A DNA stretch of 64,000 bases from Asterias rubens (GCF_902459465.1 NC_047082.1:930001-994000); one strand, 5' to 3'; counted from the first letter of the stretch, positions 2,014 through 12,812 are shown. Notes: a model not told the origin generated them from the sequence alone. A program made the numbers and translations.

Positions 2014-5000
2014 CTAATTCTGACTCAGTGACGTCAACTTGATATCTGCATACTCGTGAACAATGTCATTACTGGACTGCTCTTGAGTGAATTTGTGGTT
2101 TTTATTTGTTGGAGGCGGATTAGGAATCTCGTACGCTGACATCGCACTTGTAGTGACATCAGATTCTTTCGAATTCGGATTGACTGCAGCTGCAGGGCTT
2201 GGAGTTTCATACGTTGAGTCAGTAATGACGTCATATTCCGACGAATTGGGATTAATTGCGCTCTTAGGACTTGAAGTTTCGTACGTTGAGTCTTTAATGA
2301 CGTCATATTCTGGTGGGTTTGAGTTAACTGTACCCAGACGGCTTGGAGTTTCGTAGGCTAACCCTGGAGTGACGTCAGCTTGTTTCGTGTTGACTGTACC
2401 ATTGGCACCATTTATTCCCCCGTCTCTTCTTTTTTGCCTGTATATTTTATAGGACAACATAGTTTAATTAACAATGTGGTTAGTAAGTTTTTCAACTGCC
2501 CGACAGTAGGGCCTACTTGTTATAGGCAATCATTTTCACACGTCGTGGACGTAATTTAAAGGGCAGGTTGCATCAAGCATAACTGGTTATTTTCCCTGAT
2601 GAAGTTCCTCATGTGCTTTATTGCCAAGGGAAGTGCGTCTACCTGTTGTCCTGTTGAGTCTGCTGCCACCGAGCGTCCTTTTTATGCAAGTCTGTCAAAC
2701 TTGATGTAACTTGAGACATGTGTCTTGGTAGTTATAATGCATTTCATTTGAACTTTAAATGATAAATGGTCATCACCGTGACCCGTGTTGGTCATATTGA
2801 CCCTATCCATAGTTAAGTTTATGCTTCAGATTGGGCCTCTTTGACCTAACCCGTGAAAACTAAAAAACGTGATCTGAAGACAGTTTGCATCTTACCTCTT
2901 TCTGAAGGTAATAATGACAATCACAATGAAAATCATCAAGGATACGATTACTCCAACTGCTATTCCAATGAAAGCCCCTGGTTGGATTAACAAAAAACAT
3001 AAACATTATCCAGAATAGCGGATTTGAGACATGGTTTCTAGTAATCATAGCAACTTCAAACTCCTTCCGGTTCTCTTTGATGTACCTACTCAGTTGTTCC
3101 CTGAATATCACTGTGATCTGATATGAATAAGCTTCCAAATCCAGAGGCGCTATTATGTTTTTTTGTTGAAAACATTAATAATTGTTTTGGGGTGACTTTT
3201 GTACACATTATGAGTAAGTTTAAGATACTTGCTTTATTTCAAATGAAGCAATGACATTGGGGTCATCACAGCACAATAATTATCAATATTAGGTTCTTTA
3301 ATAGTAGTTCGGGAGAAAACATTATTTCTCTGGACGATTTGAACTGGTATGAATTTTAGATAGACAAACCTGTTTTGGATGTTTGTGGGTTGGGTATCTC
3401 TCGCCCATCAGTGGTGTCACCAGGGTCACTCGATGGCCCTCCCGACGAGGCGGTCACTATCATGTTGTTAGTCTGGTTCGTAGTCGTGGGCACTACACTT
3501 GTAACTGTGTGTGAAACAGTTGTCATTGCCATGGGTGTGTTATTAGTCTGGGTCGTTGTCGGGGGCGATGCTGTGTATGAAAAAGTTGTCGGTGGTACAA
3601 CTATAATATGGAAAAGGACGGATACTTAATGTCACTCATTTATATTAATAGGATTTGATTGTTTTTGTTTTCAAGCCCTATACTTCACGGAGCCAACGAA
3701 GGCGATTGCTTCATGCCCCCTGGTCATGCCTTGGTGCCATTGAAATGCTCCAGTAGAAATGTACAATTTCCTTATCATAAGGGTGCCCTTTACCAAGGAA
3801 AAAATGCCCTGGCGCCCTTGCCCTTTCACTGAACGAAGCATACATGCCCGTGTTTTACTATTAGCGATTATATCCCATTGAATGTCCTATCGATGTGTGT
3901 TAAGTCTATGGTTCTGTAAACCTTAATGAAAGTATCGTCGCAGTGAAGTTAAGAATAGTGGAAGTGAGGGTGTGTCTGATGTTATTGAAACTTTACCTGC
4001 TGTGCATGTTGGTACAGAGTTGCTCCATTCTGCAATGTTTTCCCTCTTTATACATTCGATGGTCTCGGCTCCTTGAATAACGTACCCAGTGTTACACACG
4101 AAGCTTACATGGGTACCGAAGAACTTGGAGTTGGCTAAACTATAAGAGACGTGGGTAGGATTTGTGACTTCATGGCTCCCGTGGGCTGGTGGGCCAATTA
4201 CATTATTGCAAACTCCTTCGGAAACTGAAAGTCAAACACAAAATATTCTTTGATTGGAAGTCATATGTGGTTTAGTTTGCACATCCTAAAACGTATGCTT
4301 AAATGCAGTGGACACTATTGGTAATTACTCAAAATAATTATTAGCATAAAACCTTTCTTGGTGACGAGTAATGGGGAGAGGTTGATGGTATTAAACATTG
4401 TGAGAAACGGCTCCCTCTGAAGTGCCTTAGTTTTTGAGAAAGAAGTAATTTTCCACGAATTTGATTTCGAGACCTCAAGTTTAGAATTTAAGGTCTCGAA
4501 ATCAACCATCTGAACGCACACAACTTCGTGTGACAAGGGTGTTTTTTTCTTTCATTATTATCTCGCAACTTTGATGACCGATTGAGCTCAAATTTTCACA
4601 GGTTTGTTATTTTATGCATATGTTGAGATACACCAACTGTGAAGGCTAGTCTTTGACAATTACCAATAGTGTCCACTGCCTTTAATATAATGTTATATAT
4701 TTACCTAGTGTGAAACGGGCGTTTCGGAGTAATGTTATGTGACAATGTATAAGTTCAGCTCTGCTTTTCAAAAACAAGTTGAATCATTTAAACAAGCTGC
4801 AGTCAAGAAGACTTCATTTATAGCAGAAAATTACTTCAAAGTGTTGTGTGATATACTTGCATTGATTTTAGGAATATGTCCAATTTCCCTGTACCTTTTC
4901 CTGGTACTTAAATTATCAACCAACGCTCAATCGGGCGGAATTACAAAAAACAGCTGCTGGTTGAGTTTTTAAGCCAAGAATTAGCACATTTTTTTTACAA

Positions 5001-5668
5001 ATTGGGGGGGGGGGGGGGCAAATAGTTTGTGGTGTTTTTTGTTGGGGGGGGGCAAGTAAGTTTCTTAGCTTACTTTTGTAGATTGATATTCGCCAATGAC
5101 CACCGCAGTATTGGTTTGAGTTGCCTGGACAAATATTCCGGCACTCTGATTCTTTTGCTGTCCCACGTCTTCCATAATCCTCGTTGTTTCCGCAGTAACA
5201 CTCCGTCTCAGATTCTACACCAGCATATTTATAAGATCTACTGCCACAGTAATTGAAACACCACTCCACGGACAAGCTGTTGGAGGTTGTTGAATCCCCA
5301 CTCAAATCCCGACCTCTCCATGTCCCATCTTCAAAGCACCCCAAATATCCAGGTCCTATATAAAACGATACAAACGTAGCTATAGCAATTCTAATAGTGG
5401 TCACCAAAAGAGATGTTTCCAAAAGGAGATTAGCCGTTAAAAAAAGCAGTCTAATTTAAACACTTTGAACCACGCACACAAGTTGTTTTCTGTGTATTTG
5501 TAAAAGGCACGAGTTGTGGGCAGCGAAGACAAGAAACTAAAGCACTGATCTTGAAACTGTGTAATAGAGAGAGAGTTTCTTACCGGTAGTCTGCGCATTT
5601 GATGACGTCATTAGTTGATAAACCAACGCCGTCCAAATTAGTGCAGCTCCGTACAATGAATGAAGCAT
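2014..5668 (-). CDS. WSC-Sushi(CCP)-mucin stalk-TM receptor-like protein, paralog 1 (6 coding exons, about 443 aa)
   Basis: Exons 5668-5584 (signal peptide MLHSLYGAALIWTALVYQLMTSSNA-QTT), 5355-5074 (WSC: YLGCF...WCFNYC...YAGVE...CYCGN...CPGN...CGG.WRISIY), 4224-3997 (Sushi: C...PPAHG...FVCNTGYVIQGAETIEC...WSNSVPTC), 3600-3370 (Thr/Pro-rich), 2977-2896 (TM GAFIGIAVGVIVSLMIFIVIVIITFRKR), 2437-2014 (Tyr-rich tail). All junctions are GT-AG, phases are compatible, total 1332 nt. Confidence 0.88.
3678..3848 (+). repeat. Interspersed repeat of about 170 bp (copies at about 46820-46960, 50420-50590 inverted, 54900-55068)
   Basis: Shared text ATACTTCACGGAG...GCGATTGC.TCCATGCCCCTGGTCAT.GCCTTGGTGCC.TTGAAATGCTCC...GGTGCCCTTGCCC...ACGAAGCATACA. 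Confidence 0.8.
4299..4685. mobile_element. Kolobok-like MITE family A, full copy
   Basis: TTAA-flanked; TIRs A(T)GCAGTGGACACTATTGGTAATT ... AATTACCAATAGTGTCCACTGCCT. TTAA TSD with RR..YY ends is characteristic of Kolobok. Confidence 0.85.
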
Positions 5669-12000: not shown

Positions 12001-12812
12001 CTCGGCCCTTAATCGCACGGCCTCGACCCTGATGGTTTTTAACCAGTCGCTACCCTTTTATTCCCAACATTGAAGTGTGATTTGCTTACTTTTGTAGATT
12101 GCTATTCGCCAACCGCCGCCGCAAAACTGGTCAGAATCCCCCGTGCACGTGTACTCCTCGCAGTCCGACTCCTTTACTCGACCGTGTCGTCCATAGTTCT
12201 CATTATTACCGCAATAACATTCTTCTGCATATTCCAAACCAGCATACGTGTAGTCGACATGTAAATTGTCTTGGCAATGTTTGAAACATCGCTGAACGGA
12301 AAGGAGGTTGAAGGTTCTGGAGCCACCTTTGAGAGCGCGATTACTCTTATCCACAAAGCATCCGAGATGACCTGGTGCTGATAAAGATCCAAAAAGAAGA
12401 AACAAATTAAAACCCGAAAGTTCATCAATAATTATTATTCATAAATACCTCAGACAGTTTCGCTATTCCTATTGGTGGAGAGCGCGTCACGTGGGGTGTT
12501 TAAACCGTTGATAAAGACTTGGTGTGCACACAAAATATCCAACCTGCCCGGGTGTAAAGGAAAACACACTACAACAATATTTATTATAGTCCTTGAAAAC
12601 CCGTGACATAAAAAGATAAGCTTTTAGAGATTTGACTTTTGTGGTACAAAGTTTGTCAAAAAATCAAAGGTTAAAAGAGAAATACGAGTTGACAAACCGT
12701 TAATTTGTGCGAGCGCTGATACCACTACTTGGCATATTATAATCCAAGCACCACCCCGCAATCTGCATCCACCTTTATGGGATTTCAATGTCTGGAACCG
12801 AAATTCTTTCAT
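9093..12812 (-). CDS. WSC-Sushi(CCP)-mucin stalk-TM receptor-like protein, paralog 2 (6 coding exons, about 424 aa)
   Basis: Exons 12812-12698 (MKEFRF...GAWIIICQVVVSALA-QIN, putative signal; least certain exon), 12377-12090 (WSC), 11393-11169 (Sushi), 10593-10435 (Thr-rich), 9769-9688 (TM GSLIGIVIGVLLAVIIGLAFIIFICRKR), 9498-9093 (Tyr-rich tail). Same exon phases as paralog 1, total 1275 nt. TATA-like TATATAAAAG about 25 bp upstream of the ATG. Confidence 0.85.

What the first reader, a model, noticed from the sequence alone, without database searches (positions are those of the whole stretch)
2014..12812. Tandem pair of WSC-Sushi receptors with the same ectodomain plan but different phosphotyrosine tails
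Seen: two 6-exon genes with identical exon phases encode signal-WSC-CCP-Thr-rich stalk-TM. The Sushi N-termini are very similar (SEGVCNNVIGPPAHG vs SQGVCSNAIGPPAHG), but the tails do not align. Paralog 1 has YETP/YEIP, YDVI and a terminal EYADI. Paralog 2 has NxxY-type motifs (NNMYE, DNVLYE, ENIIYE), LYSEV and a YVN. Established: WSC is a putative carbohydrate-binding module, CCP is typical of complement and adhesion proteins, pYxxP binds Crk/Nck/Abl SH2, pYxN binds Grb2, and SxYxxI fits the ITIM consensus. Inference: these are a paired-receptor-like, glycan-sensing (possibly innate immune) family with divergent signalling outputs. I do not recognise this architecture as a named receptor.
Basis: partly seen in the sequence, partly recalled or inferred. 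Interest (0 to 1): 0.7.

Follow-up and report, generated by a model that had tools for sequence, protein, structure and literature searches.

The report
Sea-star WSC-Sushi receptors with swapped tails
Two neighbouring starfish (Asterias rubens) genes encode real but unstudied cell-surface receptors from a sea-star-only family in which nearly the same outer 'head' is joined to different tyrosine-rich inner tails, one ancient and one newly evolved in the genus Asterias.

Summary
Window 2014-5668 (g1) and 9093-12812 (g2) hold two minus-strand, 6-exon genes with the same exon phases. Both encode signal peptide, WSC, Sushi, Thr-rich stalk, TM segment and a Tyr-rich tail. The heads are 57-58% identical and the tails do not align.

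My g1 model equals XP_033645127.1 (uncharacterized, Asterias rubens), and RNA covers its exons only.

New points:
- The pair is half of a four-gene tandem array. Two more paralogues (B, A) lie just before the window; the scan already reported them on that adjacent DNA (s1-150315).
- g2's tail is the family's ancestral tail, shared with B, A, Patiria and Acanthaster. Its NxxY and YS(E/Q)V tyrosines and the C-terminal VENIIYE are invariant.
- g1's tail is the odd one. It is unique in the genome, found only in Asterias, and partly built from a 72-bp tandem repeat.
- g1 is a mosaic. Exons 1-4 match B (83/79/96% amino-acid identity) and include a ~300-bp tract that is 99-100% identical. All similarity stops 46 bp past exon 4.
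- In Patiria and Acanthaster the same head also sits on tyrosine kinases within the same arrays.

"Paired-receptor-like" is therefore supported in a loose sense, best by g1/B. Glycan sensing, immunity and the specific SH2 partners remain untested inference.

The parts
5584..5668 (-). g1 exon 1: ATG and signal peptide (MLHSLYGAALIWTALVYQLMTSSNAQTT)
   Evidence: Model is identical to XP_033645127.1. RNA depth 6-14 here and 0 in the next intron.
5074..5355 (-). g1 exon 2: WSC domain
   Evidence: Pfam PF01822 E 1.2e-20. KREMEN1 WSC is the nearest solved structure, E 3e-22. 83% aa identity to paralogue B.
3997..4224 (-). g1 exon 3: Sushi/CCP domain
   Evidence: Pfam PF00084 E 1.4e-8. A contig joins 3997-4224 to 3390-3600, the exon 3-4 junction.
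3370..3600 (-). g1 exon 4: Thr/Ser/Pro-rich stalk (alternative acceptors give isoforms X2 and X3)
   Evidence: 51% S+T+P. 96% aa identity to B with dS = 0. Isoforms.
3415..3700 (-). Tract 99-100% identical to paralogue B (exon 4 plus the start of intron 3), flanked by 70-80% identity. Read as a recent gene-conversion tract.
   Evidence: Sliding-window identity; dS = 0 in exon 4 against 0.19-0.21 in exons 2-3.
3324..3369 (-). End of all DNA similarity between g1 and B, 46 bp into intron 4. This is the mosaic breakpoint between the shared head and the private TM and tail exons.
   Evidence: blastn; identity decays across 3298-3414.
2896..2977 (-). g1 exon 5: transmembrane segment (AFIGIAVGVIVSLMIFIVIVIITF) plus an RKR stop-transfer
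   Evidence: No charged residue. Only about 69% DNA similarity to the TM exons of g2 and B.
2014..2437 (-). g1 exon 6: Asterias-specific cytoplasmic tail of 140 aa with 7 Tyr (AYETP, PEYDVI, STYETS, SEYDVI, STYETP, AYEIP, HEYADI), plus the stop codon
   Evidence: The only hit in the genome is itself. Not matched by the ancestral-tail profile. Found only in A. rubens and A. amurensis. RNA depth 17-20, and a contig with 0 mismatches ends a piece at 2436.
2196..2355 (-). 72-bp tandem repeat (2.2 copies, 75% match) inside the g1 tail exon. It encodes the duplicated EYDVI-x-DSTYET(S/P)SP module.
   Evidence: TRF.
1201..2013 (-). g1 3' UTR (at least this long)
   Evidence: Contig X1 record 1 (1712 nt, 0 mismatches) runs from 2436 to beyond 1201.
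12698..12812 (-). g2 exon 1: ATG, long n-region and signal peptide ending ...SALAQIN
   Evidence: Same layout as the N-termini of Patiria and Acanthaster homologues.
12090..12377 (-). g2 exon 2: WSC domain
   Evidence: Pfam PF01822 E 1.2e-16.
11169..11393 (-). g2 exon 3: Sushi/CCP domain
   Evidence: Pfam PF00084 E 5e-9. One of only four family-type Sushi exons in the genome.
10435..10593 (-). g2 exon 4: Thr-rich stalk
   Evidence: 57% S+T+P.
9688..9769 (-). g2 exon 5: transmembrane segment (SLIGIVIGVLLAVIIGLAFIIFIC) plus RKR
9093..9498 (-). g2 exon 6: ancestral-type tail of 134 aa (NNMYE, LYSEVV, NYVN, FDNVLYE, C-terminal LVENIIYE), plus the stop codon
   Evidence: Aligns end to end with tails from B, A, Patiria and Acanthaster. 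Y43, N80, Y83, V123, N125, I127, Y128 and E129 are invariant. Profile hit at E 4.7e-36. 94% identical in A. amurensis.

Best explanation
g1 and g2 are two members of a four-gene tandem array in Asterias rubens (order g2, g1, B, A on the minus strand of C22:916-943 kb). The array belongs to a family so far found only in sea stars.

Each member is a type I single-pass membrane protein. A compact WSC + Sushi head sits on an O-glycosylation-type Thr/Ser/Pro stalk, followed by one TM helix and a disordered, acidic, tyrosine-motif tail of about 135-145 residues.

Shown:
- The family is modular. The head exons (1-4) are exchanged or homogenised between neighbours by duplication or gene conversion, while the TM and cytoplasmic exons stay private.
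- The ancestral tail (g2, B, A, Patiria, Acanthaster) carries fixed motifs: a juxtamembrane NNxY, PxYS(Q/E)V(V/I)K, VYA(T/N)P, GWV(D/E)NxxY and a C-terminal GWVENIIYE.
- g1 kept a B-like head but carries a tail confined to the genus Asterias, partly made by a 72-bp tandem duplication, with YxxP and YDVI motifs.
- In valvatid sea stars the same head is also fused to tyrosine-kinase domains in the same arrays.

Inferred:
- The head binds an extracellular ligand, either glycan or protein.
- The tails act as phosphotyrosine docking scaffolds. The hydrophobic-x-N-x-x-Y sites would serve PTB domains, and the YxxV/I, YxxP and YxN sites would serve SH2 domains.
- The tails would be phosphorylated in trans, by kinase-bearing paralogues where those exist and by cytoplasmic kinases in Asterias. 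Receptors with one ligand specificity would then deliver different intracellular outputs.
For: Gene models, domains and RefSeq identity.

Exon-only RNA coverage and spliced contigs for g1.

Four-gene array: WSC search, exactly four family-type Sushi exons in the genome, and models of A and B with the same exon phases.

Mosaic g1:
- blastn shows 84-87% identity to B from the 5' flank to 46 bp past exon 4, then none.
- A 99-100% identical tract lies at 3415-3700; the stalk exon has dS = 0 against 0.2 in WSC and Sushi.
- Domain identities g1/B are 83/79/96% for the head but 54% in the TM segment, and the tail is unalignable.

Ancestral tail:
- Alignment A3 has 3 invariant Tyr among 11 invariant columns, hypergeometric P = 0.008.
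- The A3 profile hits only B, g2 and A in the genome.

g1-type tail: unique in the genome, Asterias only, 72-bp repeat, and all 7 Tyr kept in two A. amurensis genes.

Second species: in A. amurensis a gene with a g1-type tail and a gene with a B-type tail have identical Sushi exons (0/225 nt different) and WSC exons differing at 3/279 nt.

Kinase link:
- WSC-Sushi-TM-kinase proteins exist in Patiria and Acanthaster.
- They are interleaved with kinase-less members in the head tree; Pmin_156 is sister to RTK172 at 100/97 support.
- P0156 and P0172 are near-identical through the WSC and Sushi domains, and the similarity collapses at the stalk.
- RTK, RTK and a kinase-less gene lie adjacent in Patiria, and three kinase-less genes are in tandem in Acanthaster.
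Against: - No evidence of phosphorylation, ligand, tissue or function was obtainable. All signalling partners are inferred from short linear motifs, which occur easily by chance in disordered sequence.
- The YxxV/I and NxxY motifs equally fit endocytic sorting signals.
- A. rubens has no WSC-Sushi kinase partner, so trans-phosphorylation by a paralogue cannot operate in this species.
- Tail conservation between A. rubens and A. amurensis is uninformative. dS is only 0.01-0.06 and dN/dS runs 0.6-2.1 on a handful of changes, for the old tails as well.
- Expression and splicing of g2 were not shown directly.
- The restriction to sea stars rests on a word-seeded search and on a representative search whose top 150 was swamped by multi-WSC proteins.
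Confidence: 0.6

Rival explanations
1. These are endocytic or scavenger-type receptors. The conserved tyrosines would be sorting signals rather than phosphotyrosine docking sites: YxxPhi (YSEV, YSQV, YDVI, YADI) for AP-2, and hydrophobic-x-N-x-x-Y for Dab2/ARH-type PTB adaptors, as in the LDL receptor. The family would internalise whatever the WSC-Sushi head binds. Different tails would then mean different trafficking, not different signalling.
For: The invariant motifs YS(E/Q)V and V(D/E)NxxY fit the established YxxPhi and FxNPxY-like consensus sequences as well as they fit SH2/PTB docking sites. g1 keeps YDVI twice and YADI once. Asterias has no kinase-bearing paralogue.
Against: - The closest relatives with the same head are receptor tyrosine kinases within the same tandem arrays.
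- Five to ten tyrosines per tail, several in YxxP or YxN contexts that are not sorting signals, are more than a sorting signal needs.
- Weak language-model leads point to phosphotyrosine adaptors (SCIMP, poxvirus A36R), though the scores are below the reliable range.
Confidence: 0.2
2. These are mechanical or adhesive surface sensors of the fungal Wsc1/Slg1 type. The WSC head would anchor to extracellular glycan matrix, the glycosylated stalk would act as a spring, and the tail would relay strain. This is what the automatic RefSeq names of the valvatid homologues imply.
For: The overall layout of WSC, Ser/Thr-rich stalk, single TM and tail resembles Wsc1. RefSeq names such as 'cell wall integrity and stress response component 2/3-like' and 'SLG1-like' appear.
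Against: - Fungal proteins match only over the WSC domain, 21-22% of the query.
- A Sushi domain sits between WSC and stalk.
- The tails share nothing with known families.
- The nearest solved WSC domain is animal KREMEN1.
- Animals have no cell wall.
- The kin are tyrosine kinases.
Confidence: 0.08
3. The g1 tail is functionally irrelevant. g1 would be a young chimeric duplicate whose 3' end drifted or was replaced by non-coding sequence that happens to stay open, so the 'different output' is noise. Only the ancestral-tail members (g2, B, A) would be working receptors.
For: - The tail is restricted to one genus.
- It has no detectable homology to anything.
- It is partly a recent 72-bp tandem repeat.
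- dN/dS between the two Asterias species is about 0.9-1.3 on 8 substitutions.
- A second reading frame of 107 codons is also open across the repeat.
Against: - The 140-codon frame is intact in one A. rubens gene and two A. amurensis genes, and a shorter version sits on another A. amurensis chromosome.
- All seven tyrosines and both YDVI motifs are kept.
- The exon is spliced and expressed at a depth similar to the other g1 exons.
- The exon has the same position, phase and size as the ancestral tail exon.
- dN/dS is just as uninformative for the anciently conserved B tail (2.1 on 9 changes).
Confidence: 0.12

Closest known systems
WSC-Sushi receptor tyrosine kinases of valvatid sea stars (RefSeq auto-names 'Cad96Ca-like', 'FGFR 1/2/3-like', 'Ret-like'; P0163, P0165, P0172-P0176; none characterised)
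   Same: They share the signal-WSC-Sushi-stalk-TM ectodomain plan, at 40-55% identity to g1 and g2. They belong to the same tandem arrays and are interleaved with kinase-less members in the head tree.
   Different: g1 and g2 have no kinase domain; their cytoplasmic part is one 134-140-aa exon with no Pfam match. Their tails share no similarity with the juxtamembrane or C-terminal parts of these kinases. No such kinase gene exists in A. rubens.
Paired immune receptors of vertebrates (KIR, LILR, SIRP, PILR, Ly49)
   Same: Neighbouring genes carry near-identical ligand-binding ectodomains kept alike by gene conversion but have different cytoplasmic parts. Examples are g1/B here, the g1like2/gene-4 pair in A. 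amurensis, and P0156/P0172 in Patiria.
   Different: The ectodomain is neither Ig nor C-type lectin. No member has a short tail with a charged TM residue for an ITAM adaptor. The only ITIM-like site is not conserved at position -2. No link to immunity was shown.
Fungal Wsc1/Slg1 cell-wall integrity sensors
   Same: An N-terminal WSC domain, a Ser/Thr-rich stalk, a single TM segment and a cytoplasmic tail.
   Different: An extra Sushi domain is present. Similarity is limited to the WSC domain. The tails are unrelated, the proteins are animal, and the kin are tyrosine kinases.
KREMEN1/2 (Kringle-WSC-CUB-TM Dickkopf receptors)
   Same: The closest solved WSC domain (E 3e-22). Also a type I membrane protein of deuterostomes.
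   Different: There is no Kringle and no CUB domain, Sushi is present instead, and the tail is unrelated. Only the WSC domain matches.
Transmembrane adaptor proteins with multi-tyrosine tails (LAT, PAG, SCIMP)
   Same: A disordered acidic tail studded with YxN, YxxV/I and YxxP motifs. A weak language-model resemblance to SCIMP (0.76) and poxvirus A36R (0.77-0.78) was seen.
   Different: Those adaptors have almost no ectodomain, whereas here there is a 170-aa WSC-Sushi head plus a stalk. There is no sequence homology, and the Atlas scores are below the level at which hits are reliable.

Membership tests
Asteroid WSC-Sushi single-pass receptor family (unnamed; LOC117304667/8 in A. rubens and homologues in A. 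amurensis, Patiria miniata and Acanthaster planci) | Signal peptide, one WSC, one family-type Sushi beginning (S/R)xGVCxNxIGPP, an S/T/P stalk and one TM segment, encoded by 6 exons with phases 0/1/1/1/1/2 | tested here: met
   for both g1 and g2.
Asteroid WSC-Sushi single-pass receptor family (unnamed) | Ancestral cytoplasmic tail with NNxY, PxYS(Q/E)V, GWV(D/E)NxxY and a C-terminal GWVENIIYE | tested here: met
   Met by g2 (profile E 4.7e-36). Not met by g1, whose tail is an Asterias-specific replacement or extreme divergence.
WSC-Sushi receptor tyrosine kinases (valvatid sea stars) | Cytoplasmic protein tyrosine kinase domain (PF07714) | tested here: not met
   No Pfam hit on either tail. 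The ORFs end 134-140 aa after the TM segment. The genome has no further family-type Sushi exon next to a kinase.
WSC-Sushi receptor tyrosine kinases (valvatid sea stars) | Family-type WSC-Sushi ectodomain in the same tandem cluster | tested here: met
   40-55% identity and an interleaved tree. Adjacency of kinase and kinase-less genes in Patiria.
Paired immune receptors (KIR/LILR/SIRP/PILR type) | Adjacent genes with near-identical ectodomains | tested here: inconclusive
   Not met by the reported pair g1/g2 (WSC 58%, Sushi 57%, stalk 38%). Met by g1 and upstream paralogue B (83/79/96%, with a 99-100% identical tract).
Paired immune receptors (KIR/LILR/SIRP/PILR type) | One partner has a short tail and a charged TM residue that recruits an ITAM adaptor | tested here: not met
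   All four TM segments lack D, E, K, R and H, and all tails are 137-147 aa.
Paired immune receptors (KIR/LILR/SIRP/PILR type) | The other partner carries a conserved ITIM, (S/I/V/L)xYxx(I/V/L) | tested here: inconclusive
   g1 has one match (SEYDVI). The equivalent site reads LEYDVI and PEYDVI in the two A. amurensis genes, and the first copy is PEYDVI in all.
Paired immune receptors (KIR/LILR/SIRP/PILR type) | Ig-superfamily or C-type lectin ectodomain; role in immune cells | tested here: not met
   The ectodomain is WSC + Sushi. Cell type and function could not be tested.
Fungal Wsc1/Slg1 cell-wall integrity sensors | WSC followed directly by the Ser/Thr stalk, with homology beyond the WSC domain | tested here: not met
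   A Sushi domain is intercalated. Fungal hits cover only 21-22% of the query, i.e. the WSC domain.
Fungal Wsc1/Slg1 cell-wall integrity sensors | Cytoplasmic tail that binds the Rho GEF Rom2 | not tested
   No comparison with the yeast Wsc1 tail was run; the tails have no Pfam match.
KREMEN | Kringle + WSC + CUB ectodomain | tested here: not met
   Only the WSC domain matches. Kremen 2 appears as a WSC-only hit.

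The most novel reading that the evidence does not exclude
Sea stars independently evolved a true paired-receptor system on a WSC-CCP scaffold. Gene conversion would keep the ligand-binding heads of neighbouring genes nearly identical, and possibly fast-evolving under ligand or pathogen pressure (WSC dN/dS about 1 among Asterias copies). 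The same head would be wired to opposing outputs: a tyrosine kinase in valvatids, an ancient PTB/SH2 docking tail, and in Asterias a newly minted tail with YxxP and ITIM-like YDVI motifs. g1 would then be a documented case of a new signalling tail arising by tandem duplication of a 24-residue tyrosine module.
Probability: 0.2. Interest if true: 0.75.

Novelty: new variant of a known kind. Interest (0 to 1): 0.5.

Why it matters
Echinoderm surface receptors beyond the TLR, NLR and SRCR expansions are poorly known. This appears to be a sea-star-specific receptor family with a domain combination (WSC + CCP) that has not been described for any studied receptor.

Its evolution is unusually easy to read. 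One head module is combined with three kinds of cytoplasmic module: a kinase, a tail conserved across two sea-star orders, and a tail new to one genus. Gene-conversion tracts and a sharp breakpoint are visible in the DNA.

That makes the family a tractable natural experiment on two questions: how receptors acquire new signalling outputs, and whether paired-receptor logic evolved outside vertebrate Ig and lectin families. The practical value is moderate. No function is known, and the neighbouring half of the same array was already reported by this scan.

Tried and rejected
1. Hidden homology between the g1 tail and the ancestral tail. MAFFT places some tyrosines in common columns. However, hhalign gives probability 0.4%. 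The ancestral-tail profile does not hit g1 exon 6. tblastn in all frames finds nothing, and blastn finds no DNA similarity for exon 6 although the TM exon shows about 69%. The g1 tail is either diverged beyond recognition or replaced; I could not tell which.

2. Derivation of either tail from RTK juxtamembrane or C-terminal segments. No significant match.

3. The exhaustive HMMER search with the WSC exon. Its top 150 was swamped by multi-WSC proteins. Only P0092 and P0147 carry the family-type Sushi, so it says little about taxonomic range.

4. dN/dS of the tails between A. rubens and A. amurensis. There are too few substitutions (dS 0.01-0.06) to be informative.

5. The splice-joint table from read laying was filled by MITE-derived joints. 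Junction support therefore rests on contig piece ends, one spliced contig and the depth profile.

6. The look-up of encoding contigs returned nothing for the isoform-X2 proteins P0157 and P0176.

7. Protein Atlas look-alikes of the tails (SCIMP, poxvirus A36R, unnamed mollusc clusters) score 0.76-0.90 with low recognition values. They are leads only.

8. Literature searches on WSC with Sushi, RTK, sea star or echinoderm found nothing on this family. The one echinoderm hit is an SRCR/WSC/Sushi skeletal-matrix protein of different architecture.

9. One search was an empty script.

Full report
**What is in the sequence**

The window is G000:C22:930001-994000 of Asterias rubens. On the minus strand I built two splice-aware models with GT-AG at every junction and an open frame throughout.
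- g1: exons 5668-5584, 5355-5074, 4224-3997, 3600-3370, 2977-2896 and 2437-2014 (443 aa).
- g2: exons 12812-12698, 12377-12090, 11393-11169, 10593-10435, 9769-9688 and 9498-9093 (424 aa).

Both have exon phases 0/1/1/1/1/2.

Pfam calls WSC (E 1.2e-20 and 1.2e-16) and Sushi (1.4e-8 and 5e-9). It finds nothing on the stalks or tails. The stalks are 51-57% Ser+Thr+Pro. Each protein has one uncharged 24-residue TM segment followed by RKR.

g1 and g2 align at 44% from the signal peptide through the TM segment (WSC 58%, Sushi 57%) and not at all in the tail.

**Are the genes real?**

My g1 model is identical to RefSeq XP_033645127.1 (LOC117304668 isoform X1). Isoforms X2 and X3 use downstream acceptors in the stalk exon.

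RNA-seq raw reads (X20) give depth 3-20 on all six g1 exons and zero in the bins that lie wholly within introns 1, 2, 4 and 5. A 1712-nt transcriptome contig with no mismatch runs from beyond 1201 (3' UTR) and ends a piece at 2436, the exon-6 acceptor. Another contig joins 3997-4224 directly to 3390-3600. The joint table of that call was swamped by MITE copies, so not every junction was seen.

For g2 no A. rubens protein record came back. The indirect support is threefold:
- The two transcriptome runs that carry spliced g1 hold 27-32% of the words of the g2 span, about its exon share.
- Its N-terminus and its whole tail align with annotated homologues.
- A. amurensis has an annotated 418-aa gene whose tail exon is 94% identical.

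**The pair is half of an array**

A genome-wide search with the g1 WSC exon found two more copies just before the window, at C22:926360 (83% identity) and C22:919495 (49%). I modelled both; each has the same six exons and phases.
- B: C22:927127-922513, which is RefSeq LOC117304667.
- A: C22:920191-916016.

A search with the g2 Sushi exon shows exactly four family-type Sushi exons in the genome. The order along the minus strand is g2, g1, B, A. The scan had already reported A and B from the adjacent window (s1-150315).

**Which tail is the odd one?**

The tails of g2, B and A are homologous to one another and to the tails of Patiria miniata and Acanthaster planci proteins. They share these motifs:
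- a juxtamembrane NNxY
- PxYS(Q/E)V(V/I)K
- VYA(T/N)P
- GWV(D/E)NxxY
- the C-terminal GWVENIIYE

In the 9-sequence alignment, the invariant columns, numbered on the g2 tail, are N17, Y43, V46, N80, Y83, D105, V123, N125, I127, Y128 and E129. Three of the six tyrosines in the g2 tail fall among those 11 invariant columns (hypergeometric P = 0.008).

The Grb2-type YxN is the exception. It occurs only in Asterias (g2 NYVN, B VYAN), and valvatids have YATP there.

The g1 tail behaves differently:
- Its only hit in the genome is itself.
- The ancestral-tail profile misses it, and hhalign gives 0.4%.
- In a database of 5.8 billion sequences it occurs only in A. rubens and A. amurensis: two full copies at 96% identity and one short form.
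- A 72-bp unit repeated 2.2 times at 2196-2355 encodes the duplicated EYDVI-x-DSTYET(S/P)SP module.

**g1 is a mosaic**

g1 and B are 84-87% identical at the DNA level from the 5' flank through exons 1-4, introns included. The similarity ends 46 bp past exon 4, at window 3324.

Inside this block, a stretch at about 3415-3700 (the stalk exon plus the start of intron 3) is 99-100% identical and is flanked by 70-80% identity. The stalk exon has dS = 0, against 0.19-0.21 in the WSC and Sushi exons. I read this as a recent gene-conversion tract.

The TM exons of g1, g2 and B retain only about 69% DNA similarity, and the tail exons retain none.

A. amurensis shows the same thing independently. There the array reads g2-like, g1-like2, g1-like1, then a gene with a B-type tail. 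g1-like2 and the B-tailed gene have identical Sushi exons (0/225 nt) and WSC exons differing at 3/279 nt, yet their tails are unrelated.

Pairwise dN/dS among the Asterias heads is 0.46-1.16 for WSC and 0.41-0.91 for Sushi. That is high for Cys-rich domains, but no pair is significantly above 1.

**Kinase relatives**

Profile and single-sequence searches return WSC+Sushi proteins only from sea stars: A. rubens, A. amurensis, Patiria, Acanthaster and one unnamed assembly. Outside that group only the WSC domain matches, in fungi, molluscs, an insect and Kremen.

Seven of the valvatid proteins are WSC-Sushi-TM-tyrosine kinases. In a maximum-likelihood tree of the heads they are interleaved with kinase-less members. 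For example, Pmin_156 is sister to RTK172 with support 100/97. That pair is near-identical through the Sushi domain and unrelated from the stalk onward.

In the Patiria genome two RTK genes and a kinase-less gene lie side by side on one strand. In Acanthaster three kinase-less genes are in tandem. A. rubens has no such kinase gene.

The closest relatives are kinase-less proteins with the same tail. The RTKs are further members of the same family, interleaved with them in the head tree.

**How it probably works**

Shown: a modular family of single-pass receptors in which one WSC-CCP head is combined with different cytoplasmic modules, with ongoing exchange of head exons between neighbours.

Inferred from established motif knowledge:
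- The ancestral tail has a hydrophobic residue at -5 and Asn at -3 before two invariant tyrosines (V-D/E-N-x-x-Y). That is the PTB-domain pattern of Shc/Dab-type binding sites. It also has an invariant YS(E/Q)V.
- g1 offers YxxP (Crk/Nck/Abl-type SH2) and YDVI/YADI.

I therefore favour phosphotyrosine docking scaffolds that give the same ligand different outputs (confidence 0.6).

The main rival is that the same motifs are YxxPhi and NPxY-like endocytic signals (0.2). A Wsc1-like mechanosensor (0.08) and a functionally irrelevant g1 tail (0.12) are less likely, for the reasons given under each rival.

Glycan binding and immunity are untested. The nearest solved WSC domain is that of KREMEN1, which from background knowledge is a receptor for a protein ligand.

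**Comparison with known systems, and verdict**

The family is not a member of the fungal Wsc1, KREMEN or classical paired-immune-receptor families, because defining features were tested and not met (see the membership table). It resembles paired receptors in one respect only: near-identical heads on different tails, maintained by conversion.

No paper describes it. I rate it a new variant of a known kind, a single-pass receptor with tyrosine-motif tails, of moderate interest. The most interesting parts are the mosaic origin of g1, the genus-specific tail and the kinase versus kinase-less pairing.

Noticed in passing
window 4310-4674 and 5830-6189; further copies at about 20257-20632, 37558-37908, 39828-40095, 51370-51731 and 52639-53001: A MITE-like element of about 365 bp with terminal inverted repeats GGACACTATTGGTAATT. 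The terminal motif has 18 matches in the window against 0 expected. One copy lies in g1 intron 2 and one just upstream of g1 exon 1. Transcriptome contigs and raw RNA reads pile up on it at depths of 10^3 to 10^6, and this swamped the splice-joint table.
   Followed up: partly
window 7592-7740: A near-perfect palindrome (52-nt arms, 96% complementary, 45 nt apart, with a nested 26-nt pair) between g1 and g2, probably a small foldback MITE. By eye, a similar-looking sequence lies just past the stalk exon of paralogue A (C22 about 917400-917560); this was not aligned.
   Followed up: partly
window 178-616 and 7882-8190; C22:928323-928752: An 80-82% similar segment of about 330-440 bp recurs about 1-1.8 kb beyond the 3' ends of g1 and g2, and once more further downstream of g1, just upstream of paralogue B. 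It is either a remnant of the tandem duplication unit or another dispersed repeat.
   Followed up: no
L030 (A. amurensis CP134971.1:5486194-5510060): The A. amurensis array has one more gene than that of A. rubens: two genes with g1-type tails in tandem. P0151, a third 439-aa protein with a B-type tail, matches none of the head exons in this locus, so at least one further copy exists on that chromosome. A short form with a g1-like tail (P0155, 293 aa) sits on a different chromosome.
   Followed up: partly
L030:3-422, compared with window 9096-9497: The A. amurensis g2 orthologue appears to lack the Glu of the otherwise invariant C-terminal WVENIIYE; it reads ...GWVNIIYE. This would shift the spacing of the terminal motif. 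It could be real or an alignment or assembly artefact.
   Followed up: no
L031 (GCA_014845345.1, JACSEG010002366.1:1843-3081): P0147, a B-like homologue of unknown species, is encoded on a 3.8-kb contig as one uninterrupted 1239-nt ORF with no introns. The contig is therefore either transcript-derived or carries a processed retrocopy.
   Followed up: no
P0186 and P0187 (ENA contigs of 956-1410 nt): 148-aa ORFs equal to the stand-alone ORF over the g1 tail exon (window 2014-2460), with a few substitutions, occur in ENA assemblies. The marine metatranscriptome runs X7-X13 also hold about 5-6% of the g1 span. Sea-star transcripts or eDNA therefore seem to appear in environmental data sets.
   Followed up: no
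window 2037-2357, minus strand, alternative frame: A second open frame of 107 codons overlaps the g1 tail exon. This is most simply a by-product of the 72-bp repeat and its stop-poor composition, not a gene.
   Followed up: no
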